DNA of 64,000 nucleotides from Nageia nagi (GCA_050084985.1 JBITNC010000001.1:161510001-161574000); one strand, 5' to 3'; positions 19,755-42,074 are shown, counted from the stretch's first letter. The notes: generated by a model not told the origin, from the letters alone. Translations and numbers: made by a program.

Positions 19755-22742
19755 ATGTCAATCAATGATTGAGATTGAAAATTTTTATGAAAAAAGCTTT
19801 GAGTTATAGAAGCTAAAGATTGAGGATTTGCTCATAGATAGAGATCTATGGTTTATTTTCTTTGAAAAAGAAACCATATAGTACTTCCAATAAAGATTGG
19901 AAGAAACTAAATCAAAAAGTAAAGAGCTTGATCTAGTTGGCTCTTGTTGATTAAAATTTCTAGAGAAAAGACTTCAAAGGCTCTCTAGGAGAAGTTGGAG
20001 GCTTTGTATCAACATAAGTCCCTAGTTAACAAACTTTTCCTCATGAAGAAATTGTATAATATTTTAATGTATGAGGGTGATTTGGTAGCATATCATATCA
20101 ATGCTTTCAATATTATAGTGAGCCAACTTCAATCTATTGATGTTAAGATTGCAAAAGAAGATAAATGCATTGTATCAATATGCCCTCTATAAGATTCATG
20201 GGATAATTTGGTTGTAGTATTTGTGAGTAATTCTTTCAATTATACTTTGAAGATGTGGTGGAATATTTTTCATTAGAGGATTTGGGGAGAAGATCCATGG
20301 AGGGAAAATAAAATGATTCCCTAATGGTAAGAGGATGTATAAAGGAAATAGAGAAATCAATATCTGGTGATAGATCAAAATATAAAGGTAAATATGGTGG
20401 TAGATCTTAGTCTTGAGGTATATCTGGTCCTAGATGTTAGAGTTATGGCAAGATTAGCCATTTGAAGAGAGATTGTAAATCTAGGGAAGAGATATGATGA
20501 ATCCACTTTTGTAAAAGATAATAAATCCAATAATAAAATTGGGGATGCATATTTAGCATCATGCTCTACTAGATCATATCAAAATAATTAGGTAATTAAT
20601 ATGGGATCCTCTTTTTATATGACTCTTTATAAAGAGTGGTTTGTGAATATAAATAATATAATAAAGGGGCAATATTATTAGGAGATGATGGTCCTTTTGA
20701 AATAATTGGTCATGGAAGGGTGAAAATAAAGTTTCATGATGGTAGAGTAAGAACCCTCCTAGGTATGGCACACATTCATCATTTTACTAGAAATTTATTT
20801 TTTGTAAGTAAGATAGTCGATGCAAATGTATATTTTAGTCTCAATAAAGCTGAATGTAAATTGGTTCATGGATTAATGGTGTTGTCATGAGGGGTTCTAT
20901 ATGGAACCTTGTATAGGATTTTGATAAGCACCATGTTATCTTAGTATAATAGTGCATCTATTTATATGGTTAAATTAGATGGAACTTTGGTTGATTTGTC
21001 AACACTTTGGAATCAAAGAATGGGACATATTGGATAGAAAGGATTGTAGACATTATATAAAAAAGGTATGATTGAAATTTCTTGATTGCTCTATGGGTTT
21101 TGATTTCTATAAGAATTATATTTATGGTAAGAAGAAACATATGAGTTTCCCATATGGTGCTACAACATGGAGTTTATATTTGGTCCATAGTGATGTTTTT
21201 GGTCCTTCATCCCTTGGAAAATAACAATACTATGTTTCTTTTATTGATAATTTTTTGATATATTCATGCATCTATTTTCTCAAGAGCAAAGCTAAAGTGT
21301 TTGAAAAAATTAAAGAATTTAAAGTACTTATTTAGAATGAAAGTAGAAACAAAATAAAGGTGTTGAGAAGTGATAATGTAGGAGAATATTATTCAAACAA
21401 TTTTGATGAATTATGTAAAAAATATAGTATCACATGGCAAAAGACTACTCCATATTCACCTCAACATAATGGAGTTGCTAAGGGATTGAATAAATATATT
21501 ATGGAAAAGGCAAGGATCATGCTCAATAGTAATAGATTGGTACAAGAATTCTAGGCAAAATTAGTCAATATAACATGCTACATGTTAAATCAATCTCTTA
21601 CATAAGCTTTTCCTTAACAAAATCCATTTGAAGCACTTTTTGGTAAGAAACCCTCCCTATCACTTATTAAAGTTTTTTTTATAATGAATTCATTCATAAT
21701 GCAAAGGAAAAAAAAAGGATTAAGCTTTACAACAAGGCTATTAAGTGTATGTTTATTGGTTATAAAGATCATGTTAAAAGTTATAAGCTTTGGAATCTAG
21801 AAACTAAGAGTATTTCCTACAGTAGAGATGTGGTGTTTAGCGAATTGAAAAATGATCCCAAGAATAAAGTAACACCAAAAGAAACAAAAAAAGGTGTATT
21901 TTGAGTTGATGGAAGATGATCCCTACTCAATAGAAGAAGAATAAGAGGATGAACCAAAGTTTCATACACCAATGTTAAGGAGATCAACATATGAAAGAAG
22001 GTAACTTGAAAGGTATAGCCCACCTAATTTTTGTTCTTCTTTTGTTTTATGTATTACTCATGAAGATCCTAGAACTATTGAAGAAGCAATTAATTTTGAA
22101 GAGGAAAGTATTTGGGAAGAGGCCGTGAATGAAGAAATGAACTCTTTAGATAGGAACAAGATATGGGATCTAGTAGAATTATCTGCTAAAAGAAAGGTAA
22201 TTTGGTGATAATGTGTCTTCAACAAGAAGTAGAATGCTGAAGGAAAAATGGAAAAATATAAAACCTACCTTATTGTTAAAGGTTATTCATAGGTAGAAGG
22301 AATTAACTATGGTGAGATAATTTCTCTTGTTGTAAAGTTAATCTTAATAAGATGTCTTTTTTCTATCATTATTGCATTTGATATGGAAATAGAGAAACTA
22401 GAGTAAAAAATGCATTCCTTCATGGGGAATTGGAGGAGGAAACTTATATAAAATTTCGTCTTGAATGATTTGTTGAGGTAGGAAAGGAAGATCTTATTTT
22501 TAAGTTAAAAAAACCTTTGTATGGATTGAAATAGTCACCTAGGATGTGATATCAAAAATTTGATACTTATATTTTAGGACTTGGTTTTATTTGTAGCAAT
22601 GTTGAATATTGTATATACATAAAGGAAGTTGGTAATGAATTTGTTTGCATAATTTTGTATATTGATGATATGTTACTAATTGGAAATAGTAGTAAAATGA
22701 TTAGTGTTATGAAGTCTTTGTTAGAATAACAATTTGATAAGA
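19755..22742 (+). pseudogene. copia gag-pol (gag, zinc knuckle, protease, integrase, partial RT)
   Basis: IEIENF..FEL*KLKIEDLL; C*SYGKISHLKRDC; LWNQRMGH; LVHSDVFGP; LRSDNVGEY; TPYSPQHNGVA; EDPRTIEEA; AFLHGELEEE; LYIDDMLL. Many stops and frameshifts. Confidence 0.92.
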
Positions 22743-25984: not shown

Positions 25985-26090
25985 TTTTTTGTGGAGAGTA
26001 AACTTAATTTTAGTCATAAATCTATTTGAGTTTTTCTTTCTTATACTCCCTAAAATTTGATATCTTTTAGGGAAATAAAAATATTATACC

Positions 26091-26450
26091 ATGGTATTTT
26101 ATGCATTTATTCTTGAAGATGCATTTCCTTTGGAAGACTAACCTTATATTGCTAAATCTATAAGTAATATTTAGTTTAATTTAGTATGAATAAATCTTAG
26201 AAAAAATAACATTGAAATGCAATAAACTTTTTAAGAACCAATAGAAGTAGAAGAAGAAGAGATAATTGAACATATAAATGATTCAAATATACTATCTAAG
26301 TTGCTTAGTCATAGTTTAAAAGATGGATTATTGAAATGGTACTTTTGTATCCTTGAAATATGTATTGATAGCTACAAGTCTCTTGTTAGAACAATTGTAG
26401 AATATTTTAAGTATAATACTAAAATATATGAGATACTTAAATATTTCAAT
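26091..26450 (+). pseudogene. gag, 5' part
   Basis: KLLSHSLKDGLLKWYFCILEICIDSYKSLVRTIVEYFKYN matches the Retrotrans_gag core pattern (LF..SL...A..W...L....I.S...L...F...F). Confidence 0.75.
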
Positions 26451-26525
26451 GCTAATACTAATACTAATATAATACTAATAATAATAATAATAATAAAACT
26501 ACCATTTCATTAAATCTAGATTTAT

Positions 26526-29293
26526 TTTAGTCTAGGATGATAATAATAATGGTATATATTAGTTTCGAAGGTTATCATAATTGGATTTCATAATTAGCTC
26601 TCTACATAAACATAGACTATATTTGTAAGATTGTGGATCCTCCTAAACCCTCACCCATCAATATATAAAAAATAAATATTTTTTATTATGGGGTAAAAAT
26701 TGCAGGTTTTGAAATGGTCTTGATCCATTTTGAACATAATATAACAATATATAAGAATCAATACAAATCATATTACAAAATGCAATAGAGAGAAAAAATC
26801 ATCCTAGTAATCAAAATGAAGATTGCTAACAAAACAAATATGAAAAGATCCAACTAGAGCATCTTCTTGAGAGATTTCCTAATTTTCTTGATTCATTTTG
26901 GAAATTCTTCTAGAAGCCTAAATTTCATAGTGACTATGAATATCTTCATATCTTTATTGAAGTAGTATTCAATTCTATTTGAATTTCATGGATAATTTGA
27001 GAATTAAATTTAAATAAGAATTAAAATATTTACGTAATTATCAAATTTGAATAGTTGAATACTAACAATTTACATGATACTATCACTTTTAATTTTTATT
27101 TATATTTCACATGAATGCATGATTATTAAACAATTCAAAGAGAAAAAAAAATTTTTTGCAAGTGATAATATAAACGTGGTCATAAATTTGTAAATAAGTA
27201 ATCAAAATTATCTTGTTTATGAATTGAATGTAGAACACCATTCATATAGAATATTAGTAGTTATTTTTTTGCACAATTGAATGATTTAGAAAAAAATACA
27301 TTTAAAAAAATGTTTAATAAACATACTAATGAAATATATTTAAAAATATTGAACATTTTCAAATAATGAAGCACTACAATTTCTAGTCTAAGCTAATAAT
27401 AATAATGGTATAAATCGCATTCCAAAGTCATCATAATTAGATTTCAACATTGGTATAATTAGTTTACAAAGTTATTGTAATTATATTTTATAATTAGTTA
27501 TCTATATAAACATAGACCATGTTTGTAAGGTTGTGGGTCTTCCTAGACCCTCACCCATCAATTTACCAAAACTAAAAATATTTTTTTATTACAAGGTAAA
27601 AAGTGTAGGTTTTGAAATTGTCCTTGTCTACTTTGTGCAAAATGTAGCAATATAGGAGAATCAATACAAATTAGACTACAAAATGTAGCAAAGAGAAAAA
27701 ATTACCGTAGTAATAAAATGAGGAGTGCAAACACAAAAAAGATGACAAGATCCAACTAGAGAATAATCTTGAGATATTTTCTAATTTTCTTGATTCATTT
27801 TCAAAGGTCTTTCGGGAGCCTAAAATTTAGAGTTATTATGAATATCTTTATATCTTCATTGAATTAATATTCAATTCTATTTAAATTTCATGGATAATTT
27901 AAAAACTAAATTTAAGGAACCATATAAATATTTACACAATTTTCAAATTTGAATAGGTAAATACTAAAAATTTACATGATATTATCACTTGTAATTTTTA
28001 TTTATATTTCACATGAATGTGGATGTATAAATAGTGCAAACTTTATTTTTTCTCTTTTAATTGTTTAATAATCATTCATAGATCAAGAAATCCTTTCAAA
28101 GCTAATAAAATTGACCATAAATTTGCAAATAAGTAATAAAAATAATCTTGTCCATGAATTGCTTGTAGAACTCCATTCATTTAGAAAATTAGTAGTTGAT
28201 ATTTTTTTGCATAATTAAATGATTTAGAAAAAAGGACATTTAAAAAATATTTAATAAACATAATAATATAGATAGTGATCGCATACTAATGAAATATATT
28301 TAAAAATATTGAATATTTTCAAATAATGAAACACTACACATTCTAGTCTAAGCTAATAATAATAATAATATATGACTTTACAAAGTTATCATAATTAGAT
28401 TTCAATATTGGTATAATTAGTTTACAAAGTTATCATAATTATATTTTATAATTAATTCTCTTCATAAACGTAGACCATATTTGTAAGGTTGTGGGTCCTC
28501 CTAAACCCTAACCCATCAATATATAAAAAATAAAAATGTTTTTTTATTATAAGGTAAAATGTGCAAGTTTTGAAATGGTCCTTGTATATTTTTTATAAAA
28601 TGTACCAATATAGGAGAATCAATACAAATCAGACTACAAAATGTAATAGAGAGAAAAAAGTACCCTAGTAATAAAATGAGGAGTGCTAGCAAAACATAGA
28701 CGAGAAGAGCTAACAAGAGCTATCTTCTTAATACATTTCCTAATTTTCTTGATTCATTTTGGAAGGTCTTTCGAAAGCTTAAAATTTAGACTAATTATGA
28801 ATATCTTCATATCTTCAGTGAAGTATTATTCAATTCTATTTAAATTTCATGAATAATTTAAAAACTAAATTTAAGTAACCATTAAATATTTACATAATTT
28901 TCAAATTTTAGTAGTTGAATATAAATAATCTACATAATATTACCACTTGTAATTTGTATTTATATTTCACATAAATGTGAATGTACAAATAGTGTAAAAT
29001 TTATTTTTTCTATTTAAATTGTTTAATAATTGTGCATAGATTAGGAACTCCTTTCAAAGATAATAAACTTGGCCATAAATTTATCAATAAGTAATCAACA
29101 TCATCTTGTCCATGAATTGCATGTAGAATTCCATTCATATATAATATTAGTACTTGATTTTTCTCAACAATTGAATGATTTGAAGAAAAATAGAATTATA
29201 AAAAATTTAATAAACATAATAATATAGATAATGATCACATACCAATGAAAATATATAAAATATTGAACATTTTAAAATAATGAAGAACTACAC
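26526..29293. repeat. Subterminal tandem array, three units of ~855-960 bp
   Basis: Units start at ~26526, 27381 and 28341 (TCTAGTCTAAGCTAATAAT-like). Shared landmarks include CATAGAC(T/C)AT.TTTGTAAG.TTGTGG and CTAATTTTCTTGATTCATTTT. Confidence 0.92.
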
Positions 29294-29355
29294 TTATATT
29301 GAAATATCATAATTTTGACCTAAATATGTCATACACATCATGTATAATTTGAAAA

Positions 29356-29900
29356 TTAATCAAAAGGACCATTGAAATATACTTTAACATATTTACATAT
29401 TTTTGAAACTTGTAATCCTTGAACAATATTTATAGCTTCATCCAATTTGTTTAATCCATCAAATGCCCAACTATGAGGAATTTTAAACAAATTAAGGTGA
29501 ATATTATTTTCACTAATATAGTTGGCATCACCTATGAATAATATATTTTCTCTTCCATATTTCTCACCATATATGTTAACAACATCTTCCAAGTTCTTTG
29601 TATAAATGGGGATAATTTTTCCATTATGAGAATGCTTAAAATCCATTTGACAATATAAACTCAAACTTGTTATCTCTCAATCATTGAAATATCTTGAACA
29701 TGGGTTGCATTTAGATGGAAACTAATTTTGTAAACCATAAAGCAATGTCAAAAGTTTCTTGAGCAACTTCTAGAAGTTTAGGAGTAAACATTCTTATGAA
29801 GTATTTGTATCCACTATACATAAAGTAATGCATTATTTTTATAGAAATTCTAAATAGTACTCCTTCTACTCCCAAAACTAGGAGTTTCTTTGTAAATGAA
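29356..29900 (-). pseudogene. FCP1/SCP (NIF) HAD-phosphatase-like domain, decayed
   Basis: ORFs 29711-29932 and 29356-29664 give KKLLVLGVEGVL...YFIRMFTPKLLEVAQETFDIALWF...PIYTKNLEDV...YGRENILFIGDANYISENN..IPHSW. This matches the order of NIF motifs KKLLVLDxxGxL, xRP, FxxxxWSS, KDL, NTLLIDDSPY. Confidence 0.72.
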
Positions 29901-30120
29901 ATGAGGTTTATAAAATCATAAGTTATATTCAATTTTATATTTTAATAAAAAAATTAAAAATGAATACCACTAAAATAAAATTCATATTTTGTTTCATCAT
30001 TCACAAAATAAAATCAAATAACATATAATAATACAAAACTACCAAAAGTCATTAATATTTTGCATCCAACATCAAACAAACATACCAATACTAATATTTT
30101 TTATTTCTATATATATGACA

Positions 30121-30360
30121 CAAATTTCTTTAACAAATTCAATCTTATATTATTTCACAAAGATATTTTCATTATAAAAGACATGGAAAATACATATTAT
30201 CTCAATAAACTATTTTCATAATGAATTACCATATATTTTAATTACATAAATTTCTTTAACAAATTCAATTTTATATTATTTCACAAAAATATTTTCATTA
30301 TAAAAGACTTGGAACATACATATCATCTCAATGAAATATTTTCATAATGAATAACCATAT
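30121..30360. repeat. Tandem duplication, ~127 bp period
   Basis: AAATTTCTTTAACAAATTCAAT...CATAATGAAT.ACCATAT occurs twice. Confidence 0.88.
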
Positions 30361-30609
30361 AGAAGTTCAGAAGTAAACATTGTTATGAAGTATTTTTATT
30401 TCATTTGATGTCCTTTATACGTTGTCTTACATATGATGGTGGATTGATAATTTTTTATTATTTTTTTTATCAAAGAATATTAACTAACCAATCTAGATCA
30501 TCGATCTGTGATAAAATAATTCTTCTTGAGTGTTCCATCATATATTTAATTTGCACAATTAATGTATTGGTGGCATCATATAATTTGATTTTTTTCCACA
30601 CTTCATATA

Positions 30610-31338
30610 GATGATTATATATTTTTAAATTCTATTATTTAATACCTAAGGGAATATGATAACTTTATTCTTTTATATTTGAACATGAATCATGTGTTTG
30701 ACTCATGTTAATATTTTTATCCAATGGTGCAACCTTTGCTAAGGAAAAAATTAATATAAAGTTAATATAGATAAATGATATCAATAAGATACCTCTTCCT
30801 CAAATATTATAAATATAAAGTTATTGATTTATATAATTAATTATATATCTACTTGATACTTCTTTCTCACTTTGAGATGCATTTATATCAACATCATTAA
30901 TATCATTTAGTACAATTGTGTTTGAAAGAAAAGAAGTTATCCTTAAATAATATTAGTAAATAATTTAAAAATATAGCTAAAACAAATTGAAGATGATTAT
31001 ATATGCTTAAATTATATTATTAAATACCTAGGATAATAGGACAAATTTTATCTTTTATATTTGAACTTGAAGCATGGGTTTGACTCATGTTAATATTTTT
31101 CTCAAATAGTGTATCCTTTGTTGAGTAAAAAATTAATATGAAGTTATTATAGATAAATGATATCAATCAAATATTTTTTCCTCAAACATCATAAATATAA
31201 ATTTATTGATTTATATAACTAAATATAAAGTTATTGATTTGAGATGCATCCATGTCAACTTCATTAATATCATTGTGTACAATTGTATATGAAAAAAAGA
31301 AGTTATCCTTAAATAATATTAGTAAATAATTAAAAACT
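30610..31338. repeat. Tandem duplication, ~380 bp period, containing small exon-like segments
   Basis: GATGATTATATAT...GTTTGACTCATGTTAATATTTT...GAAGTTATCCTTAAATAATATTAGTAAATAAT at ~30610 and ~30993. Confidence 0.88.
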
Positions 31339-32244
31339 ATCTTCCAAATCTTTCATATAAAATATTTAAAAAAGCACTTGCTCCTTCCCCCTTCCCACTA
31401 ACATATTATAATAGACTCTTATCACAAATGGAATAAATAAAACTACTATAAAAATAAATTTATTATTTATAGTTAATTTAGGTCAATGATATTTACTTGA
31501 TAGTTCTTTTTCTTTTGAAAAAGTTGAATATGCCTAAGTTATAATTATACTAAAATATTAAATAATATAATTTGAATTGATTTCTTGATTGTTATTTAAT
31601 AATATGAAAAATAAATAATAATCTCACCATGAATTTAATTAAACAAGTAAAATTACTATAATTATAAAGTTATTACTGTTAATATAGTTCAATTATATAT
31701 ACTTGATTGTTCATGTTCATTGTGATTAAAAACTTCATCTTCTTCTTTTTCATTAGTTTTATTATTATTTGTTGTTTCTATCGTATAACACAAACTTCAT
31801 CAATATTGGAAAATAATTAAATTGGAAGAAATATATACATTTATATGAAAAATTAAACTTATAAAAATTCTAGCAATTAATTTGAGTGAAAATAAGTCAA
31901 ATATAGTTAAATTAGTAAATACAATACTTGAAGTATCCTCATTTAAATCATTTTCTCTATCACTACTTGGGTCATCATTATTAATTTTAGAGTATCTCTT
32001 TGATACATCACATTAAACTTATATAAGAATAAATATGTCACCTTCATTCCTTTCCAATAATACAAAAAATAAATAATAATGTCACCATGATTTTCATTTT
32101 GATTAGAATCTTCCTCTGATCTCCACCATGTCATAGGTTTTCATGATTTTGAATGGATGCATCCTCTATTTCAATTAAAGATCACAAATTTTATCAAACA
32201 CTATATAAAAAAGTTCATAACATTTAAATAAGAAAAAATTATAC

Positions 32245-33560
32245 CTTATATTTTAAAAAATAGATACATGTTTCTAAGGAGTTCAACTTCTTGTAGAAGG
32301 ATTTTAAAAAACCTTCTTGGGTGATGTCTTCCATAATGCAAGTTAGCCTTCTTTCTTTCATATCACTCACACCCTTCACTAGTGCATCCACCAAAAAGTG
32401 ACAAAATCAATACTCCTTTTGTTGAGTAATTTGAAATAATGTCATTCCAAATGATTCTATTCTCTCACATATGAAAGGATGGAATGTAGCTTCCAAATTT
32501 ATTTTATCATTTTTTATGTCAAATAGTTTAGGAAGCACTACATTGTATCTTGCCTTCAATTAAGAGATAAATTTAGTCTTTATATTCATCACTTGCACTA
32601 TGTTGATTAGTAGAATTTATATAGAATGATAGTTAATAAATTCATGGTCTTTAAACACCCTATAAATTTCTTTCTTCCTATTGATCATATTGTTATCTTT
32701 CATCCCTTTCTATTCTTTGTTTTTGTTGTATTGTATTTTTTGAAAAGTGTGATGAGGGAAGAAATTAATAGTGATACCTTCTCCTAGATAGTGTTTGTAT
32801 TACATTATATGGAGTAGAATAAAAATAAGTAAAATTCATAGAATCTAGGAAATGATGTTAAACTTCTTTATCTAATGCTTTAAAACATCTTTTCATTATT
32901 ATCTAGGCTTCTTTTGGAATGTTATTTTTATCAAATTCCTTGTGTTTTATTTTCTTATTTTCTTTTCCTTAACTTCCATAACTAAAAATGTTGCATAATT
33001 ATGGAATATAGGTTGCGTGAAGATTATATTTCTCAAGGAAATTTTATTTGGTACATCCCATTAAATTGAATCTATCTCCATCCTTATTTGTAAAAACTTT
33101 TCTCTAAGAGTTCTCCATTTTTTTTATTTTTCTACAATATTCTTCCATCTAAATTCCTTTTTCTACTAGAGGAATAGATGAAGATATCTAAACATCACCT
33201 TGATAAATTAGTTCAACCAATTTATCAAGTTTATTATCTTTCATTTTCATATTACTATGGAAATTACCCACAAAGTATGTGTACCTTGTTATTTTTTAAC
33301 ATACTTGTAGGTGTCATCAAGTTTGGAAAGCTCTAGAAGTCTTATCAGTGCTTCCTGGCCCTTGGAGGGATCTAGTAAACAAGTTGGAGATAAAATAAAT
33401 ATACTAAAAATTTTCATATATCATTATCATATACTTTATTATTAGGTGATATTTTCCCAAATACATGAAATCCAATTATCTGTAAGTAGCCAAGCATCAC
33501 TCACTTTAGAGGAATTGCATTTTTGTAAAATTTTTGAAGAATAGAGCAAGGGTGTTTGTA
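32245..33560 (-). pseudogene. Large decayed exon whose C-terminal part resembles amino-DNA-methyltransferase motifs X-I-II
   Basis: With two compensating frameshifts, 32481-32326 reads HPFICERxRIIWNDIISNYSTKGVLILSLFGGxALVKGVSDMKERRLTCIMED. The exon ends at the donor AAG|GTAT (~32245). Confidence 0.45.
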
Positions 33561-34300
33561 ATGAAAAGAAATTGAATAATCAATAAGACTTGTTTTGACT
33601 TTAGTTTGAATGAATGCATGAATCATATGTCTTGTGTCTTTATTTGCTAGTTATTCTTCTAAACTACATTTTTTAGAATTTTATTATTGAAATTGAATAA
33701 TATAATAATTATTTTGTTGTATTTAATTTTCTCAACCTTATATGTAGCTCCTGTAGAAATATATTTGTACTAAAGTGACATTTAATGTGATTACTTTATT
33801 ATAATCTACTTTCATTTTTCTATTATTGTGAAAATTTAGTTAAATAAATATAATACCCATAAAGTATGTGTACCTTGTTATTTTATAAGATACTTATAGG
33901 TATAATCAATTTTTTGAAGTTGTGGAAGTCTTATGAGTGCTTCTCCATATTTGGAGGTATTAAGAAATGAGTTGAAGATAAAATGGAGATATTGATAATT
34001 TTCATGTATTATTATGATCTACTTTATTATTAGGTGATATTTTCTAAAGGCATGAAAGCCAATTATTTATAAGTAGCAAATCATGGCTCATTTGTAGATG
34101 ATTTACCTTTTTGTAAAATTTTTAGAGAATAGAACAAGGGTGTTTGTAATGAAAAGAACTTAAATAACCAATAAGACCTATTTTGATTTCAATTGGTATC
34201 TTTGAATTTTATCTCATGGCTTTGAATGAATGCATGATTCATATTTCTTGTGTATTTGTTTTTTGCTTATTATTTTAAGCTATATTTTTTACAATTTTAT
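33265..34300. repeat. Direct duplication, ~430 bp units spaced ~590 bp apart
   Basis: ACCCA(C/T)AAAGTATGTGTACCTTGTTATTTT...GGGTGTTTGTAATGAAAAGAA at ~33266 and ~33855. Confidence 0.88.
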
Positions 34301-34584
34301 TATTAATGTATATTCATCTTTAATCCCTTATCTTATGTCAAAGAAAAGGTTAAAGGAAATCAATAAGGTGATAATTGTAAGATGATAATATTAAAATTAG
34401 AGGAAAAATAAAATATTATATAATTGAAAACCAATATACTTCTAAATGTATTCCATTATTCAAACATTTGATTTCCAATACTATAACATCCAATGCCAAT
34501 AATCATAATATTGGAAGTTTATATGTTGCCTAATAAGTCCATATTTAATGAAATGGTGGTAATAATAATAATAATAATAATAAT

Positions 34585-35440
34585 AAAAGAGATACAACAT
34601 GTAAATGATTTTCTAAAGGGATGGAAGATATTAACAAAGGAAATTGTTATGGATGAATGAGTTAAAATATAATTTTATAAGTTCTTTGTTACCATAATTT
34701 AAACTTAAAGTCATTAACTATGAGGATGAATCACTACATAACATGATTGAAATATTATTCAAAAAAGAAACATGTATTTTTCCTCTAAATACACCAAATA
34801 ATAAAAGTGCTTGAAAAGGAAGATCTAGCAAAGAATATACAAAAAAAGATAAAGATAAGAAAATAGTTGAAATAATTGATAAGAAAAGTAGTGATGATGT
34901 GATTAAAAAAAACTTACAAGAAAATACCTAAATTTTTCAAATAGAATTGATCCAACTATTAATATATTAGTTGAAAAGAATCTCATAAAACTCCCATTAA
35001 TCAAGAAACATTATTGTCTAAATGGAGTATTAGAAGGATATAGATATGAATAATTCTATAATTATCATAAAAATGTAAGACACTCAACTAGAACTTACAA
35101 GATATTATTCAAGATCTTATTGACCAAAAATTAATAAAATTTGATGATGAATTAATTAAAGAAAAATAGATACGAGAAATTCATTACAACCTCATAATAA
35201 CAAATTGGGTATATTCATAAACCCATTTCCAAAAAGAGGTAAACAAGTGGAACAACCTAAAGTAGTAGTCAAAATGCTGAAAAAATATGATAGTTTAAAG
35301 AATTATTTCAAGCACAAATTTAGGTCAGCATGTCAATATTATCAATGTGAACATACGCAATAAACTTAAAATCATAAATTAACTAAGAAAATATTCAAAA
35401 GTTAATAGCATCACTCGAATAAGATATTATAAGAACAATC
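34585..35440 (+). pseudogene. gag, 3' part
   Basis: QHVNDFLKGWKILTKEI..ELKYNFISSL; LVEKNLIKLP; degenerate Tat/Ogre-type knuckle FYNYHKNVRHST..DIIQDLIDQ; LGIFINPFP. Confidence 0.72.
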
Positions 35441-36069: not shown

Positions 36070-37159
36070 TACAAATTCAACATTACAAAAGTTACTTTGG
36101 GGATAGAATAGTAATTCCAAATGAAGGAAATTTGAGGAAATAAATTTTGTATGAATTCCATGTTACTCGATTGTTTGCACATCTTGGGGTAAATAAGATT
36201 AGAGAAAACCTTAAATAATAATATATTTAGAGAGCAATGAAGTAGGATATAGGATATTATGTGACCACATGCATTGATTATCAAAAGGATAAAACTGAAA
36301 AAAATTTACATTTGACTTTTGGTAGGCCTTGCGTAATGAGTTAGAAACTAAATTCCATTTCAATTCTACATACCACCATGAACTGGATGGGAAAATTGAG
36401 AGAGTAAATCAAATCCTGGAAGACATGATCAGTATGTATTGTAACCATTAAAAAACCAAGTGGGAGGACAACTTGCATTTTATGGAGTTTGAATACAATA
36501 ATGCATACTAGACATCTTTAAAGATATCACCATTGGAAGCCTTGTGTGGTCGAAAATGTAGAACTCTAGTATATTAGGATAGATTGGATGAGAGATCTAC
36601 TTTTAGCAACAAAATGTTGCAAGATATGAAAGCTCAACTTAAGATTAGTTGTGAAAATATTAAATAAGCTTTTGATAGGTAGAAACATGTGGCTGACCTA
36701 CATTGAACACCTAGATAATTTATTATTACTCTATAAAGCATTCTATTAAGTCATCCAAGTTGTCAACCCCTTATGTAGGCCCCTTTGAGGTTCTAAAAAG
36801 AGTCAATCATGTAGCTTATTATCTAAATTTGCCAGCCAATTTATCTAAATTACATAATGTATTTCATGTATCTATACTAAAAAAGTACATGCCTAATCCC
36901 TCACATGTTTAGGATGTGAATAAATTATAGATGATAAATCCTTTAAATGTGGAGGTAAATCAAGTAAGAATTATAAAAACCCATAATAGGAAGCTCAGAA
37001 ATAGAAATATGGAGTAGTGCAGAGTTTAATGGGATCAATATTCTAAGAATGATTCCACTTGGAAAGACTTACATTTGATGCAAAAATAATTTCTTGATTT
37101 ATTTATTTAAGAACTAGCCTAAAAATATAGGAATTGTATTTAATATTAGGGAGGGTGAA
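36070..37159 (+). pseudogene. Chromovirus integrase remnant (HHCC finger, partly deleted core, GPF, chromodomain) with PPT
   Basis: RIVIPN..ILYEFH..AHLGVNK..YVTTCIDYQKDK; STYHHELDGKIERVNQILEDM; YVGPFEVL; HNVFHVSILKKY; RKLRNRNME*CRV*WDQY..STW. PPT AGGGAGGGTGAA at 37148-37159 is followed by TG. Confidence 0.9.
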
Positions 37160-37173
37160 TGTGATGAATTAGC

Positions 37174-40100
37174 AAATTCAAGGTACAATTTATAGGACCT
37201 TAATGAGTAATTGATCTAAGCTTATGAAAGTTATAAGTTTGACCAAAAATGAATGCTATGGACTGTTACATAAATCCACTAAGAATCTACTAAAATTAAC
37301 TAAATGTGAGTTATATTCATATTATGGGCCACTCTCCCTTCATCCTAGATAAGTAATAGACCTTACAATAATGTACAACTAAGAAAAACACATCAAAATA
37401 TCATAAATACTCATAATTATCAAAAAAATAGTAAAATATACTAGGTCTCTATAATCATAGTTGCATTTTAGAAACACATAGGGTGCAAGCATTTTGAAAA
37501 CTTAGAGGGTGGAAACATTTATGAAATATGGGGACATTTTATAAACACAACTGTGTTTTATTTTGGTGGGTATACAAAATTAAGAACTCCAACATACTCC
37601 CCATTGAAGGTGAGAGGGATGACCAGGTAGTCTCTCAACATTAAAAACTGACATGTACCAATGCCCTTGGTGAATAAGTCATCCAGATTATTTATAGTAT
37701 TGGTATAATGCAATTCAATAACTCTTTTCCAACCATATCCTAGATGAAGTGGTACTTCATATCAAAAGGCTTGGATCTAGCATGGTGCATAAGGTTCTTT
37801 TCCAACTAAATGGCACTATAGTTATCATAGAATAGGGTGGTTGCACTAAGTTGACTTTCTCCAATCTCCTTAAGCACTTTTCACATCCATAAGTCTTGTG
37901 CACTAGTTACGATGATGAAATGAATTAGCTTTGGTAGAGGATAGAGAAATAATTGTTTGTTTCCTAGAAGATGATGTACAAAGATTAAAACCAAGGATGA
38001 AACTATTTCCAAAAGTATACTTTTGAATATTAATGCTATTACCGCATTTACTATCACTATACCCAATAAGTTTCACAACATTGTCCTTGAGGTAATGGAT
38101 GCTAAACTTTGGTGTTCCTTTGACATATCTCAAAATTCTCTTTGCCACCTTTAAATGAATTTTGGAAGGAGAACTCATTTAACTAGGAACAAGTGAGATA
38201 GCATGATAAATATTAGCTTAAGAATTTGTTAGGAACATCAAGCTCCCAACTATGCTTTTGTAAGTGTGCACATCAACTTCAATAGTCCCATCTTATTTAG
38301 TCAAGTGTTCTCCATGTGCAATAGAGGTGATAATAATTGTACAATCATCCATACCAAAATTATGTAATAAATCATTAGCATGCTTGGCTTGAGAAATAAA
38401 AGTTTAATTATCATCTTGATAAACCTCCAAACCAAGAAATAGTGCATAAGACCAAGATCCTTCATCTCAAATTCTTGCATCATGGAGTGTTTGAAAGCAT
38501 TATTTAATCTATAATTAGTACTCATGTAAATAATATCATCAATATGAAGAAAAACTAGAAAAATATTAATAAAATCATGCTTATAGTAGAGATTTGGTTC
38601 ATTTTTCTCTTCAAAAACTTAGGGCTGAGCAACAAACACTTCTTCATCAAGGAACCCTTTCAAGAATGCACTCTTAAAATCCAAGAGGTACACCTTTCAA
38701 CCTTTATGAGTAGTAATGGAGAGAACCATTTTGATGGTTTCTTATCTAGCAATAGGAGGAAAGGTCTCCTCATAGTCAATTCCATATCTATATGTGAATC
38801 CTTTGGCCACAAGCCTAGCCTTATGCCTCGCAATGGTGCCATTAGCGTTAAAATTTGTTTTATAGACCCATTTAGATCCTACACCCTTTTTACCTTTTGG
38901 AAGCTCAACTAGCTTCCATGTATCATTTTTTTCAATGAAGTGTGTATCCTCTTCCATGGTCTTCATCCAAACATCATTAGTATAAGCATTTTCAAAATGA
39001 GAAGGTTCTAAATTAGTAGTAGGTACTAATGGAAAATTAGCCAATTCACCCTTTAGTTCACCATACAACTCATCACTATACAATTGGATATCTTCAAGCC
39101 TTTTAATTAGTTGATCTAGTTCTTTTGCTTGTCCTCTTATTGCCCTTTTTGAAAAATTCTGATATAACATTTGAGAAGGAGGATGATTGGCAAGTGTTCT
39201 ATTACCTCTTGCTTTATCATTCTTCTTTGGAAAGTCTCACCATTAGTTGGAATATCTTTGGGTTACACTTATGTGGAATTTTGTGGATTTTTTTATGCTT
39301 TGGAGTGCACATTTTGTTGGCTAGGCTAAATGGTATACTCTACATTAGAAGAGCTTCCATCAAAGGATCCATCATCAACAAATTATTTTAGATGTTTTTA
39401 TGCTCTCTCTTAATCAAAATAACATATTTAGAAGAAACAACTTTGTGAGTTTGAGGATTGTACAATCTATATGCTTTGCTTGTTTCACAATATCCAATAA
39501 ATATGCAAGGTTCACTTTTTGGATCTAATTTTTTTTCTATGCTCCTTTGGAACATTCACATAAGCCAAGCAACCAAACACTCTAAAATGATTCACATTTC
39601 TCATACCATGCATCAAAATGTGTTATACAATCCAAACTAGAGGTTTGAAATCTATTCAAAATATACATTAGTATCCTAATAGGTTCATCCTGATAACTAT
39701 TGTTTAAGCCTTTAGTTTGGAGCATTATTATTTCTACGTTAGCCAAGGTTATATTCTTACATTTAGCTACACCATTTTGTTGTGGAGTGTAGGTAGCTAT
39801 GAGTTGCCTTTTCACACCATGATCTTTACAATATTGCAAGAATTCATTACTAAAAAACTTTCCCCCCTCTATATCTTATTAAATATTTCAAATATAGCCA
39901 CTCTACTTTTCAACATTATTCTTAAACTCCTTAAAGTATGCAAAATATCCATCCTTGTGCTTAATAAAGTAAATCTAACATATTCTTGTATAATCATTAA
40001 TAAAGGTAAAGAAATAAATACTTTTACCATAACTTGGTGTTTGCATTGGCCCACATATGTCACTATCTACCATCTCATTGGAGACCAAGCTCTTCAAACT

Positions 40101-42074
40101 TGCAAAGTTGAGGTGCCCATATCTTAAATGGTAAATCAAAATCTTATCATCAATATTAAAATTAGAAAAATTGGATATTTTCTCACCAAATTTAAGAGGA
40201 AACAATCTATTCTTTGTCATGGAAACAATGTTGACATGTTTATGCACTTGATTTTTATCAAAAATTATACATTTTCTATCCTCAAAACCAAGCTTGTAGT
40301 TCTTTTCCATCATTTTCCCCACACTCAACAAATTGTGTTTTAATTTTGGAATGAAATATACATCATTTAGCTTCTTGTTACCTTTATTTTTAGACACCTC
40401 CATAGCTCCCATACATTTAGCTTGAATGGCTTTATCATATTTAGGTGTGATTTGGGACTTATAGGAGTCATTCATAACATAAAACAAATCTCCCTTGTTG
40501 GTCATATGGTTGGAGCACTTTATGTCAAGAATCCATGTATCATATTGATTTTGAACTGATGGGCATAAGATATGAACAAGGTGGAGGATGTATCCTTCTT
40601 ACCATAGTTGGCACATTGGTCCCCTTCTTGAGAAGCTTTCAATCTACATTCTCTCTCAAAGTGTCCATACTTGTTACACTAGTAACATTGCTTGTCTCTT
40701 TTTTCACCTCTTGGAGAATCCTGTCTACCTCTTCATTGGAATCCTCCTCTATCTTAGAAGCCACCTCTCCTTCCTCTTACTTTATAGTATCTATATCTTC
40801 TTCTACCTTGATCTCCCCCTTGAACACTAGTACTAGTGTCACTTCTCTAGAAGTGAAGGCCTTCTCTTCCACACTCCTAACATGGGAAGCTAGAATAAGC
40901 CTTTCCTCATGTGATATCAAGGAACCAATGAGATTATCAAGAGTGAGAGTGCTCATAAATTTGGTCTCTTCAAACATGATAGTGATTTGGCTCTATTTGG
41001 GAAGAAGTGTTCTCAACACTTTCTTAACTACAATATAATTTGTGATCTCCTCTCTAAGTGTCTTCATCATTTAGATACAAGTATTCACTCTCACATAATA
41101 CTCTTAAACTTTCTCATCCTCTTTCTACTTTAAATTTTCAAACTTTATTTTCAAAGTTTGAAGCCTCACTTTCTTCACTTGGTCATTGCCTTGGAACCCA
41201 TCTTTCAAGACCTTCCATGCATCCTTTATTGTATTGCAACTAGAAATCCTTGGTAAGAGCCTCTTTTTTGATGTTGATTGGAGATGGTAGATAGCAAAAG
41301 AATTCTTCTTTTGATCCTCTCTTTTAGTAGGTCTATCAACTTGAGGAAATGTACCTAATCTAGTTTTGTATATCCATCCTTAATGCCATCCCATATTCCC
41401 TTACCTATGATAAAATGCTTCATCTTCAATTCCCAATATTCATAATCCTCATCATTGAACTTTGGTATGGGAAGATAATTCACTCCAAAAGGCATCTCAC
41501 TCAGTTCAATAATAGTTGTAAAAACTATAGGCCTATTTGGATGACTTTTTGCAAAACATGATAAATTGTTGCAAAGTACCCACAACCTCTTCAAACCCAA
41601 CTAAGATCAAGTAGCTTTGATGCCAATATGAAATAATATATAATAATTGAACATACTATAACATATATCAATTATAAAATTCAAGATACAATTTATAGGA
41701 CCTCAATGCATAATATATCTAAGCTCATGGAGGTTACAAGTTTGAGCAAAGATGAATGTTATATATTGTTATACAAATCGACTAAGAATATACTAAAATT
41801 ATCTAAATGAGAGTTACATTATTCTTCTAGAACACTCTCCCATCATCCTAGACAAGAAAGGACCTTACAACAATGTGCAACTAAGAAAAACATATAATAA
41901 TATCATAAATACTTATATCTATCAAAATGTAGTAGGTCTCCAGAAATGCAATCATATTTTAAAAACATAATGGATGCAGGCATTTTGGAAACTCATAGGG
42001 TGATGGGGTTTAGGAAATGTGGGGCTATTTAAGAAATGTAGCTACATTTTACTCTAAAGGGTCTACAAAATTAA
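37174..42074 (-). mobile_element. Ty1/copia retrotransposon (Ivana/Ale-like), near full length, decayed
   Basis: LTR pair ~37174-37594 and ~41627-42074, both outer ends damaged. PBS TGGCATCAAAGC at 41614-41625; PPT at 37595-37604. All pol domains are present. Confidence 0.92.
37640..41520 (-). pseudogene. copia gag-pol
   Basis: IPKFNDEDYEYWELKM; LIGSLISHEER; CSNHMT; HLRYGHLNF; SDICGPM; YTPQQNGVA; WVYK..HKARLVAKGF; FEMKDLG; KRILRYVKGT; SSRKQTIISLSS. Confidence 0.93.

What the first reader, a model, noticed from the sequence alone, without database searches (positions are those of the whole stretch)
26497..34561. 8 kb TIR transposon carrying a methyltransferase-like plus CTD-phosphatase-like cargo gene
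Seen: 29 bp TIRs (25/29 match), clean interruption of a gag frame, and subterminal tandem arrays. A minus-strand series of exon-like segments with GT donors (~32245, ~31927, ~31702, ~31495, ~30852) runs from a large exon with an amino-MTase-like block, through small acidic exons, to an FCP1/NIF-like domain. No transposase is recognisable. Established: CACTA and MULE elements carry accessory genes, and some TE proteins (e.g. VANC) counter silencing; FCP1/SCP phosphatases act on the Pol II CTD; beta-class amino-MTases are mainly prokaryotic. Inference: this may be an undescribed plant DNA-transposon family whose single accessory protein couples a DNA-modification-like fold to a CTD-phosphatase-like fold, possibly as a chromatin or anti-silencing module. 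This copy is dead.
Basis: partly seen in the sequence, partly recalled or inferred. Interest (0 to 1): 0.85.

Follow-up and report, generated by a model that had tools for sequence, protein, structure and literature searches.

The report
Dead cut-and-paste transposon, weak cargo claim
This is a real but long-dead plant cut-and-paste transposon with no transposase gene. Most of it is internal tandem duplications, with one broken small gene that may be phosphatase-like, and the proposed methyltransferase-phosphatase fusion gene has no support.

Summary
The insertion is real. A 28-bp terminal inverted repeat (24/28; 26499-26526 and 34532-34559) bounds 8.06 kb that splits one (TAA)n tract. That tract is read as poly-Ile in the same phase on both sides of a gag-like ORF. 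About 60% of the interior is tandem duplication: 3 units of about 0.9 kb, then 2 x 126 bp, 2 x 382 bp and 2 x 589 bp.

No transposase is found. Ninety stop-free pieces from all six frames give only noise against Pfam.

The only credible coding remnant is one contiguous, intronless, broken ORF at 29359-29941 (-), with two stops and one frameshift. Its 106-aa C-terminal piece has just three relatives among 1.84 billion representative proteins. All three are short metagenome orphans.

The link to NIF/FCP1 rests on motif order and on one sub-threshold Pfam hit (19.6 bits against a cut-off of 21.8) in a metagenome relative. It is possible but unproven.

The "methyltransferase" block gets no hit in Pfam or PDB, and its motif spacing does not fit. 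The minus-strand "exons" are no more frequent than plus-strand ones.

The superfamily is unresolved; CACTA is the best guess. No other genomic copies could be fetched.

The result is an ordinary non-autonomous, Pack-like element of low interest.

The parts
26453..26498 (.). Left flank: (TAA)n/(AATACT)n microsatellite ending in TAATAAAA. It is read as poly-Ile plus Lys in the gag-like ORF.
26235..26498 (+). Left part of the interrupted gag-like ORF (88 stop-free codons).
   Evidence: ESM Atlas Retrotrans_gag clusters 0.92, 26 of 30 hits. No Pfam hit.
26499..26526 (+). Left terminal inverted repeat (starts CTACCATTTCATTAAAT). The two A's before it (26497-26498) may be a mutated CA of a CACTA end.
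26524..29295 (.). Left tandem array: three units of about 857, 959 and 956 bp, 77-81% identical. The array starts inside or next to the TIR. Units 2 and 3 begin with CACTAC-like copies of the terminus.
29359..29941 (-). Contiguous, intronless, decayed ORF of a small orphan family that may be NIF/FCP1-like. It has an N piece (29714-29941) and a C piece (29359-29676). Stops lie at 29711-29713 and 29681-29683, with a 1-nt frameshift near 29650. The motif I position reads GVEGV, not DxDxT.
30103..30361 (.). 126-bp tandem duplication (2 copies, 88-92% identical).
30360..30399 (.). 40-nt duplicate (90%) of 29771-29810, which is part of the ORF's N piece. It lies 589 bp upstream of the original.
30609..31340 (.). 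382-bp tandem duplication (2 copies, about 83%). It contains two of the claimed small exons.
32242..32559 (-). Claimed 'amino-methyltransferase-like' block: two stop-free pieces (50 and 55 aa) separated by a stop at 32407-32409. No homology was found.
33265..34304 (.). Right tandem array: two units of about 589 bp, about 77% identical.
34532..34559 (-). Right terminal inverted repeat (its reverse complement starts CCACCATTTCATTAAAT).
34560..34657 (+). Right flank: (TAA)9 followed by AAGAG. The gag-like ORF continues here (34562-34657) in the same phase relative to the repeat.

Best explanation
This is an old, immobile, non-autonomous class II (TIR, cut-and-paste) transposon of 8,061 bp.

Inferred history:
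1. A transposase supplied in trans inserted it into a (TAA)n tract in the gag region of a decayed Ty3/gypsy-type retroelement.
2. The interior then grew, or had already grown, by kilobase-scale tandem duplication.
3. It carries one passenger: a small, intronless ORF of an orphan family with the motif order of a NIF/FCP1-type HAD domain. The ORF is now broken and lacks the catalytic DxDxT motif.

The element holds no methyltransferase module and no multi-exon fusion gene.

Shown here: the TIRs, the split microsatellite with preserved frame, the arrays, the absence of a transposase, and the ORF with its three relatives.

Inferred: the transposition mechanism, the superfamily (CACTA about 0.5, hAT about 0.2, other about 0.3), and the ORF's status as passive cargo (a Pack-type capture or a fossil accessory gene).
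For: TIR and insertion:
- 24/28 match, exactly at both microsatellite junctions. Only about 4 of 4e7 inverted 28-mer pairs in the region are this good.
- The same (TAA)n tract and the same codon phase occur on both flanks.
- The left flank is gag-like by ESM Atlas, and a Ty3/gypsy integrase SH3 domain lies downstream (E 2.5e-20).

Interior:
- Arrays are seen.
- No Pfam family was found in 90 six-frame pieces; the best E was 0.014.
- No Rfam family was found.

The ORF:
- Its 106-codon stop-free run exceeds the 95th percentile of shuffles.
- phmmer hits have E 1.7e-8, 9.7e-8 and 1.5e-5, at 40-44% identity. tblastn reciprocity is shown.
- Its relatives lie beside an ORF in L001 that scores NIF at E 7.9e-4.
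- The alignment including that ORF is collinear.
- The N piece matches the FLEAC...FDVGIWSS stretch at E 0.004.

CACTA hint:
- Array units 2 and 3 start with GCACTACAATTTC and ACACTACACATTC, aligned to the terminal AACTACCATTTC.
- CACTA elements are known to carry captured gene fragments and tandem arrays (PMC8978399). Pack-CACTA papers PMC6379663 and PMC8903248 were listed.
Against: - No second copy of the element, and no empty site, could be examined. Mobility is therefore inferred from one insertion.
- The target-site duplication cannot be read inside the microsatellite. The adjacent 8 bp match 7/8. A 3-bp TSD for a CACTA end (TAA against ATA) does not match.
- Neither end actually reads CACTA.
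- No mirrored subterminal similarity exists beyond the 28-bp TIR.
- NIF affinity is weak. No Pfam, NCBIfam or PDB hit was found for the window's pieces or for family profiles. The relative's NIF hit is below the gathering score and sits beside an equally weak RGS hit. Both structure models are unusable, with pLDDT 52.7 and 38.7.
- The upstream pieces were tested only against Pfam and PDB. They were not tested against the large protein libraries.
Confidence: 0.7

Rival explanations
1. The element encodes one spliced minus-strand accessory gene whose product fuses an amino-methyltransferase-like domain, acidic linkers and an FCP1/NIF-like domain. It acts on chromatin or against silencing.
For: - GT dinucleotides do follow the named stop-free pieces on the minus strand.
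- A NIF-like ORF lies at the 3' end of that strand.
- Other notes on this genome report DNA transposons with chromatin-type cargo. These notes are unchecked leads.
Against: - No Pfam or PDB hit exists for the methyltransferase block or for any upstream piece.
- The block has an internal stop, and its putative motifs lie about 8 aa apart.
- Long stop-free runs are as common on the plus strand (11 against 9).
- Several 'exons' lie within 382-bp and 458-bp DNA duplications.
- The NIF-like ORF and its relatives end with their own stop. The relatives are 95-148-aa single-domain products.
- No RNA run holds the stretch.
Confidence: 0.04
2. The NIF-like ORF was the element's own accessory gene: a small, catalytically inactive NIF-type protein encoded by an undescribed transposon family. 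It was not a captured host fragment. Only the fusion part of the reader's idea would then be wrong.
For: - The ORF covers a whole domain, has no intron and has its own stop.
- It is so far from host NIF genes that phmmer over 1.84 billion proteins finds only three orphan fragments.
- Relatives also occur as clustered, diverged pseudogene units in an AT-rich metagenome contig. This is the pattern of a repeat-borne gene family.
Against: - Only one copy was seen in a transposon.
- No promoter, start codon or expression evidence was found.
- The lack of DxDxT may simply be decay.
- NIF identity itself is unproven.
Confidence: 0.12
3. The stretch is not a transposon. The 8 kb is ordinary AT-rich repeat-rich DNA between two independent (TAA)n microsatellites, and the inverted repeat is a chance match.
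For: - The sequence is 20-26% G+C, so short inverted matches are common; 252 pairs were listed.
- No clear TSD was found.
- No second copy exists in the window.
Against: - A 24/28 inverted match is reached by only about 4 independent loci among 4e7 pairs.
- This match abuts both microsatellites exactly.
- The flanks share repeat motif, codon phase and the terminal TAATAAAA.
Confidence: 0.04

Closest known systems
Non-autonomous CACTA (En/Spm) elements, including Pack-CACTA
   Same: Short TIRs of about 28 bp, a size of several kb and no transposase. They also carry internal tandem arrays and a gene-derived fragment, as described for CACTA elements in PMC8978399 and in the Pack-TYPE papers listed. 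CACTAC-like strings occur at the starts of internal copies of the terminus.
   Different: The ends read AACTACC and TACCACC, not CACTA. The adjacent 3-bp TSD does not match. No mirrored subterminal repeat zones were found. The arrays have 0.4-0.96-kb units rather than short binding motifs.
Non-autonomous hAT elements
   Same: A short TIR. The 8 bp directly flanking 26499-34559 match 7/8 (TAATAAAA and TAATAATA), and removing the element plus 8 bp keeps the flanking frame.
   Different: The TIR does not start with the usual YARNG. The 8-bp match is expected one time in three inside a trinucleotide repeat. No hAT transposase or dimerisation domain was found.
NIF/FCP1/SCP small CTD-phosphatase-like HAD domain (Pfam PF03031)
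   Same: The order and spacing of motif-like stretches agree: a hydrophobic strand plus GV at motif I, FD-h-h-h-W-x-(S/T) at motif II, and N-I-L-F-I-(G/D)-(D/E) at motif IV. The domain length is about 190 aa. A relative in L001 scores E 7.9e-4 against positions 45-106 of the NIF profile.
   Different: The window's pieces have no hit at E up to 10. The relative's hit is below the gathering score. The DxDxT nucleophile motif is absent: GVEGV here and DFNGV in L001. Profile searches against solved SCP/FCP structures find nothing.
VANDAL/VANC-type or other accessory-gene-bearing DNA transposons
   Same: Only the general idea of a DNA transposon carrying a non-transposase ORF and repeat arrays.
   Different: No autonomous partner, no intact gene, no short motif arrays matched to a DNA-binding protein, and no evidence of anti-silencing function.

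Membership tests
Class II TIR (cut-and-paste) DNA transposon | Terminal inverted repeats at both ends | tested here: met
   24/28 match with a 15-nt exact core, at 26499-26526 and 34532-34559. Rare among 4e7 pairs.
Class II TIR (cut-and-paste) DNA transposon | Target-site duplication directly flanking the TIRs | tested here: inconclusive
   Both flanks are (TAA)n. The adjacent 8 bp match 7/8. Both flanks end in TAATAAAA before unique sequence. The 3-bp options do not match.
Class II TIR (cut-and-paste) DNA transposon | Insertion interrupts otherwise continuous host sequence | tested here: met
   The same microsatellite and the same ORF phase (poly-Ile then Lys) occur on both sides. No empty paralogous site was available for comparison.
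Class II TIR (cut-and-paste) DNA transposon | Multiple copies with the same ends in different genomic places | not testable with these tools
   No plant genome collection was available.
Class II TIR (cut-and-paste) DNA transposon | Encodes a transposase (autonomous member) | tested here: not met
   Ninety stop-free pieces from six frames against Pfam gave a best E of 0.014. The element is therefore non-autonomous.
CACTA / EnSpm superfamily | Termini 5'-CACTA...TAGTG-3' | tested here: inconclusive
   The ends read AACTACC and TACCACC. Internal copies of the terminus read CACTACA.
CACTA / EnSpm superfamily | 3-bp TSD | tested here: not met
   For ends at 26497 and 34561 the flanking triplets are TAA and ATA. 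Microsatellite slippage could have erased a match.
CACTA / EnSpm superfamily | Mirrored subterminal repeat regions | tested here: not met
   Local alignment of the left interior against the reverse-complemented right interior scores within shuffle and control ranges.
hAT superfamily | 8-bp TSD and YARNG-type TIR start | tested here: inconclusive
   The 8-bp flanks match 7/8, but inside a trinucleotide repeat. The TIR starts CTACC/CCACC, not YARNG.
NIF/FCP1-like phosphatase domain (PF03031) | Profile match at or above Pfam's gathering score | tested here: not met
   No hit for either window piece at E up to 10 or for P0001-P0003. The L001 ORF scores 19.6 bits against a cut-off of 21.8.
NIF/FCP1-like phosphatase domain (PF03031) | Catalytic DxDx(T/V) motif I | tested here: not met
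   The window reads L-V-L-G-V-E-G-V-L. L001 unit 3 reads F-D-F-N-G-V. In a pseudogene this may be decay.
NIF/FCP1-like phosphatase domain (PF03031) | HAD Rossmann-like fold | tested here: inconclusive
   AF2 models have pLDDT 52.7 and 38.7. Foldseek against PDB gave nothing below E 1.
Amino (N6-A/N4-C) DNA methyltransferase | Profile match, plus SAM-binding FxGxG and (D/N/S)PP(Y/F) motifs at class-typical spacing | tested here: not met
   No Pfam or PDB hit for 32242-32406 or 32410-32559. The candidate HPF and SFGMT strings lie about 8 aa apart. Known classes separate these motifs by tens to hundreds of residues; this point is from background knowledge.
Pack-type transposon | Non-autonomous TIR element carrying fragment(s) of a host gene with an identifiable parent | not testable with these tools
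   Non-autonomous with a gene-derived ORF: met. A parent gene could not be sought without the genome.

The most novel reading that the evidence does not exclude
The broken ORF at 29359-29941 represents a transposon-borne gene family: a small NIF/FCP1-type pseudo-phosphatase without the DxDxT nucleophile. It would be carried as an accessory gene by an undescribed DNA-transposon lineage of very AT-rich, possibly gymnosperm-type, plant genomes.
Probability: 0.1. Interest if true: 0.6.

Novelty: new member of a known kind. Interest (0 to 1): 0.18.

Why it matters
A transposon-encoded fusion of a DNA methyltransferase and a Pol II CTD phosphatase would have been a striking new way for a mobile element to manipulate chromatin. 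The evidence here removes that reading.

What remains is an ordinary fossil: a non-autonomous TIR element enlarged by tandem duplication, with a decayed passenger ORF.

The modest residual value has two parts. The ORF defines a very sparsely populated protein family that may be a fast-evolving NIF-like lineage spread by repeats. The case also shows how easily motif-level 'domains' and exon chains appear in DNA of about 22% G+C.

Tried and rejected
Searches that found nothing:
1. Pfam on ten named pieces and then on 90 six-frame pieces gave only noise.
2. NCBIfam gave noise.
3. PDB sequence and profile searches with the window pieces, P0002, A1 and A5 found no NIF or methyltransferase chain.
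4. AlphaFold2 on A1 and A5 gave pLDDT 52.7 and 38.7. Foldseek against PDB on the A1 model found nothing.
5. ESM Atlas on the C piece scored at most 0.82, with unrelated clusters.
6. Rfam found no family.
7. A viral-contig scan found no relative.
8. The literature searches found no report of NIF-type cargo in plant transposons.
9. The scan's own index had no look-alike by sequence.

Tests with a negative result:
10. No second copy of the TIR, element or flanks exists in the window.
11. There is no mirrored subterminal similarity.
12. The motif GTTATCATAATTAG marks only the starts of the left-array units.
13. There is no second ORF unit upstream apart from a 40-nt fragment.

Partial result:
14. 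The metagenome scan returned one 1.75-kb locus (L001).

Left out by rule:
- Searching a joined spliced model.
- Searching a read-through of the broken ORF.


Full report
**Setting.** The window is very AT-rich, at 20-38% G+C per 2 kb. The finding lies in its poorest part, at 20-26%. Decayed retroelements surround it:
- Ty1/copia RVT_2 at 22550-22726 (+) and 38742-39170 (-).
- Copia Pol_BBD and gag_pre-integrs at 39975-40505 (-).
- A Ty3/gypsy integrase SH3 domain at 36715-36909 (+), E 2.5e-20.

Other agents' unchecked notes call this a gymnosperm-type plant genome with abundant dead CACTA and hAT families. I did not test that.

**The observation: ends and insertion.**
- The left end (26499-26526) and the reverse complement of the right end (34532-34559) match at 24 of 28 positions, with a 15-nt exact core.
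- The 17-nt core pattern occurs only at these two places in the 64 kb.
- I scored all 4.0e7 inverted 28-mer pairs in 26000-35000. Only about four independent loci reach 24/28 or more. This one abuts a (TAA)n tract on both sides, so chance is a poor explanation.
- The flanks belong together. The left stop-free frame 26235-26498 ends in (ATA)n AAA, read as poly-Ile then Lys. The right frame, from 34562, begins with (ATA)n AAA in the same phase and runs 32 codons further.
- The left frame is gag-like only by the ESM Atlas (0.92; 26 of 30 hits in Retrotrans_gag clusters). Pfam does not see it.
- The 'clean interruption of a frame' is therefore confirmed. 'Gag' remains a reasonable lead.

**Target duplication and superfamily.** The trinucleotide repeat makes the TSD unreadable.
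- With ends at 26499 and 34559, the adjacent 8 bp are TAATAAAA and TAATAATA (7/8). Both flanks end in TAATAAAA before unique sequence. This would suit an 8-bp (hAT) or longer duplication followed by microsatellite growth.
- A phase match in a trinucleotide repeat is expected one time in three, so this is weak evidence.
- The left tandem array starts at the TIR. A gapped alignment shows that units 2 and 3 begin with GCACTACAATTTC and ACACTACACATTC, opposite the terminal AACTACCATTTC.
- If these units are copies of the terminus, the ancestral end read CACTAC..., the CACTA signature. I put the chance of such a match at about 0.01, so it is suggestive only.
- Against CACTA: neither real end reads CACTA, the 3-bp flanks (TAA and ATA) differ, and there is no mirrored subterminal similarity beyond the TIR.
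- My estimate is CACTA about 0.5, hAT about 0.2 and other about 0.3.

**Interior.** About 60% of the element is tandem duplication:

| Coordinates | Structure | Identity |
|---|---|---|
| 26524-29295 | three units of about 857, 959 and 956 bp | 77-81% |
| 30103-30361 | 126 bp x 2 | 88-92% |
| 30609-31340 | 382 bp x 2 | about 83% |
| 33265-34304 | 589 bp x 2 | about 77% |

- There are also small dispersed duplicates: 31598-31640 matches 32056-32098, and 29771-29810 matches 30360-30399.
- These are not the short-motif subterminal arrays of a transposase-binding region. A 14-nt motif marks only the starts of the left units.
- No Rfam family is present.

**Coding content.**
- I passed all 90 stop-free pieces of 32 aa or more, from six frames, to Pfam. 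The best E-value was 0.014, which is what 90 queries give by chance. So there is no transposase, methyltransferase or NIF domain at Pfam sensitivity.
- In the zone of the claimed exons (29968-33300), stop-free runs of 40 aa or more number 11 on the plus strand and 9 on the minus strand. Both counts are somewhat above mononucleotide shuffles, and there is no minus-strand excess.
- GT after such runs carries little weight in this composition. Two of the 'small exons' are copies within the 382-bp duplication.
- The 'amino-methyltransferase-like block' (32242-32559, minus strand) consists of two pieces split by a stop. It has no hit in Pfam or among PDB sequences at E up to 10.
- Its candidate motif strings lie about 8 residues apart. 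From background knowledge, that fits no class of amino-methyltransferase.

**The one real ORF.**
- The 106-codon run at 29359-29676 (-) is the only run above the 95th percentile of shuffles.
- phmmer against 1.84 billion representative proteins found three relatives and nothing else: P0001-P0003, 95-127 aa, E 1.7e-8 to 1.5e-5, 40-44% identity.
- All three are singletons from metagenome assemblies.
- On the minus strand, the 76-codon piece 29714-29941 continues into this ORF through two stops (29711-29713 and 29681-29683) and a 1-nt frameshift near 29650. The frameshift position is inferred from the N-terminal extensions of P0001 and P0002.
- It is therefore one contiguous, intronless, broken gene of about 190 codons with its own stop. 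It is not two exons.

**Is the ORF NIF/FCP1-like?**
- A metagenome contig, L001 (1,751 bp, 27-34% G+C), holds three diverged units of the same family.
- The first L001 ORF aligns collinearly with P0001-P0003 and the window piece, down to a shared basic C-terminus.
- Its N-terminal stretch FLEAC...FDVGIWSS scores against positions 45-106 of Pfam NIF at E 7.9e-4. That is 19.6 bits, below the 21.8-bit gathering score, and it sits beside an equally weak RGS hit.
- The window's N piece matches that same stretch at E 0.004 for a single comparison.
- By eye, the order of motifs is that of a HAD/NIF domain: a hydrophobic strand plus G-V, then FD-x-x-x-W-x-T/S, then NILFI-G/D-D/E.
- All other tests found no NIF support:
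  - Pfam on the window pieces and on P0001-P0003.
  - NCBIfam.
  - PDB phmmer, and hmmsearch with two family profiles.
  - hhalign, which was weak (probability 5%).
- I therefore call the domain 'possibly NIF-like, unproven'.
- The motif I position reads GVEGV here and DFNGV in L001. In a pseudogene, the missing catalytic aspartates cannot be told apart from decay.

**Most likely history** (inference, confidence 0.7).
1. A non-autonomous TIR element was moved by a transposase supplied in trans and landed in a (TAA)n tract of a retroelement gag.
2. Tandem duplication, either before or after insertion, inflated it to 8 kb. The left array may include copies of the terminus itself.
3. All parts then decayed.
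4. The ORF is passive cargo. It is either a captured fragment of a fast-evolving small gene, as in Pack-type elements (PMC6379663 and PMC8903248, listed; captured fragments and arrays in CACTA elements, PMC8978399), or the fossil of an accessory gene.
5. The family's extreme sparsity and its clustered pseudogene copies in L001 keep the accessory-gene reading alive at about 0.1.

**Limits.**
- No plant genome collection was available, so copy number, TSD, autonomous partner and linkage of the ORF to the TIRs could not be tested.
- No RNA run holds the stretch.
I used 29714-29929 and 29968 onward instead. Those places had been part of earlier calls (4, 7, 8, 13, 19, 22).
- I took no contig for human.
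- I did not search the broken ORF as a read-through, nor the spliced model as a joined sequence.

**Verdict.** The transposon is real and dead. The fusion cargo gene is not supported. This is a new member of a known kind, of low interest.

Noticed in passing
window 27115-27156 vs 28038-28079 and 28996-29037: A 42-bp segment of left-array unit 1 is the reverse complement (86-90%) of the segment at the equivalent position in units 2 and 3. This is either a small inversion or a near-palindrome within the repeat unit.
   Followed up: no
window 36326-36909 (+): Ty3/gypsy integrase remnant. The piece 36715-36909 hits SH3_Tf2-1 at E 2.5e-20. It lies only about 1.7 kb downstream of the gag-like frame, so the host retroelement has lost its protease, RT and RNase H, or these are two different elements.
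   Followed up: partly
window 37900-41600 (-) and 22005-22726 (+): Two decayed Ty1/copia pieces. They carry RVT_2 (E 4.6e-16 and 6e-7), Pol_BBD (E 1.1e-12) and gag_pre-integrs (E 3e-6).
   Followed up: partly
L001 1-1751 (metagenome contig Ga0213500_10003831): An AT-rich contig with three diverged, partly broken units of the same orphan ORF family within 1.75 kb. There is no DNA-level repeat. Strong G over C skew (+0.2 to +0.3) runs throughout. It is probably eukaryotic (plant?) DNA in a metagenome.
   Followed up: partly
window 29771-29810 vs 30360-30399, and 33265-34304: The stray 40-nt duplicate of the ORF lies 589 bp from its source. That is the same period as the right-hand tandem array, yet no sequence similarity between the two regions was found. 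The coincidence is unexplained.
   Followed up: partly
It lies just upstream of the ORF's N piece. It was worked around afterwards.
   Followed up: no
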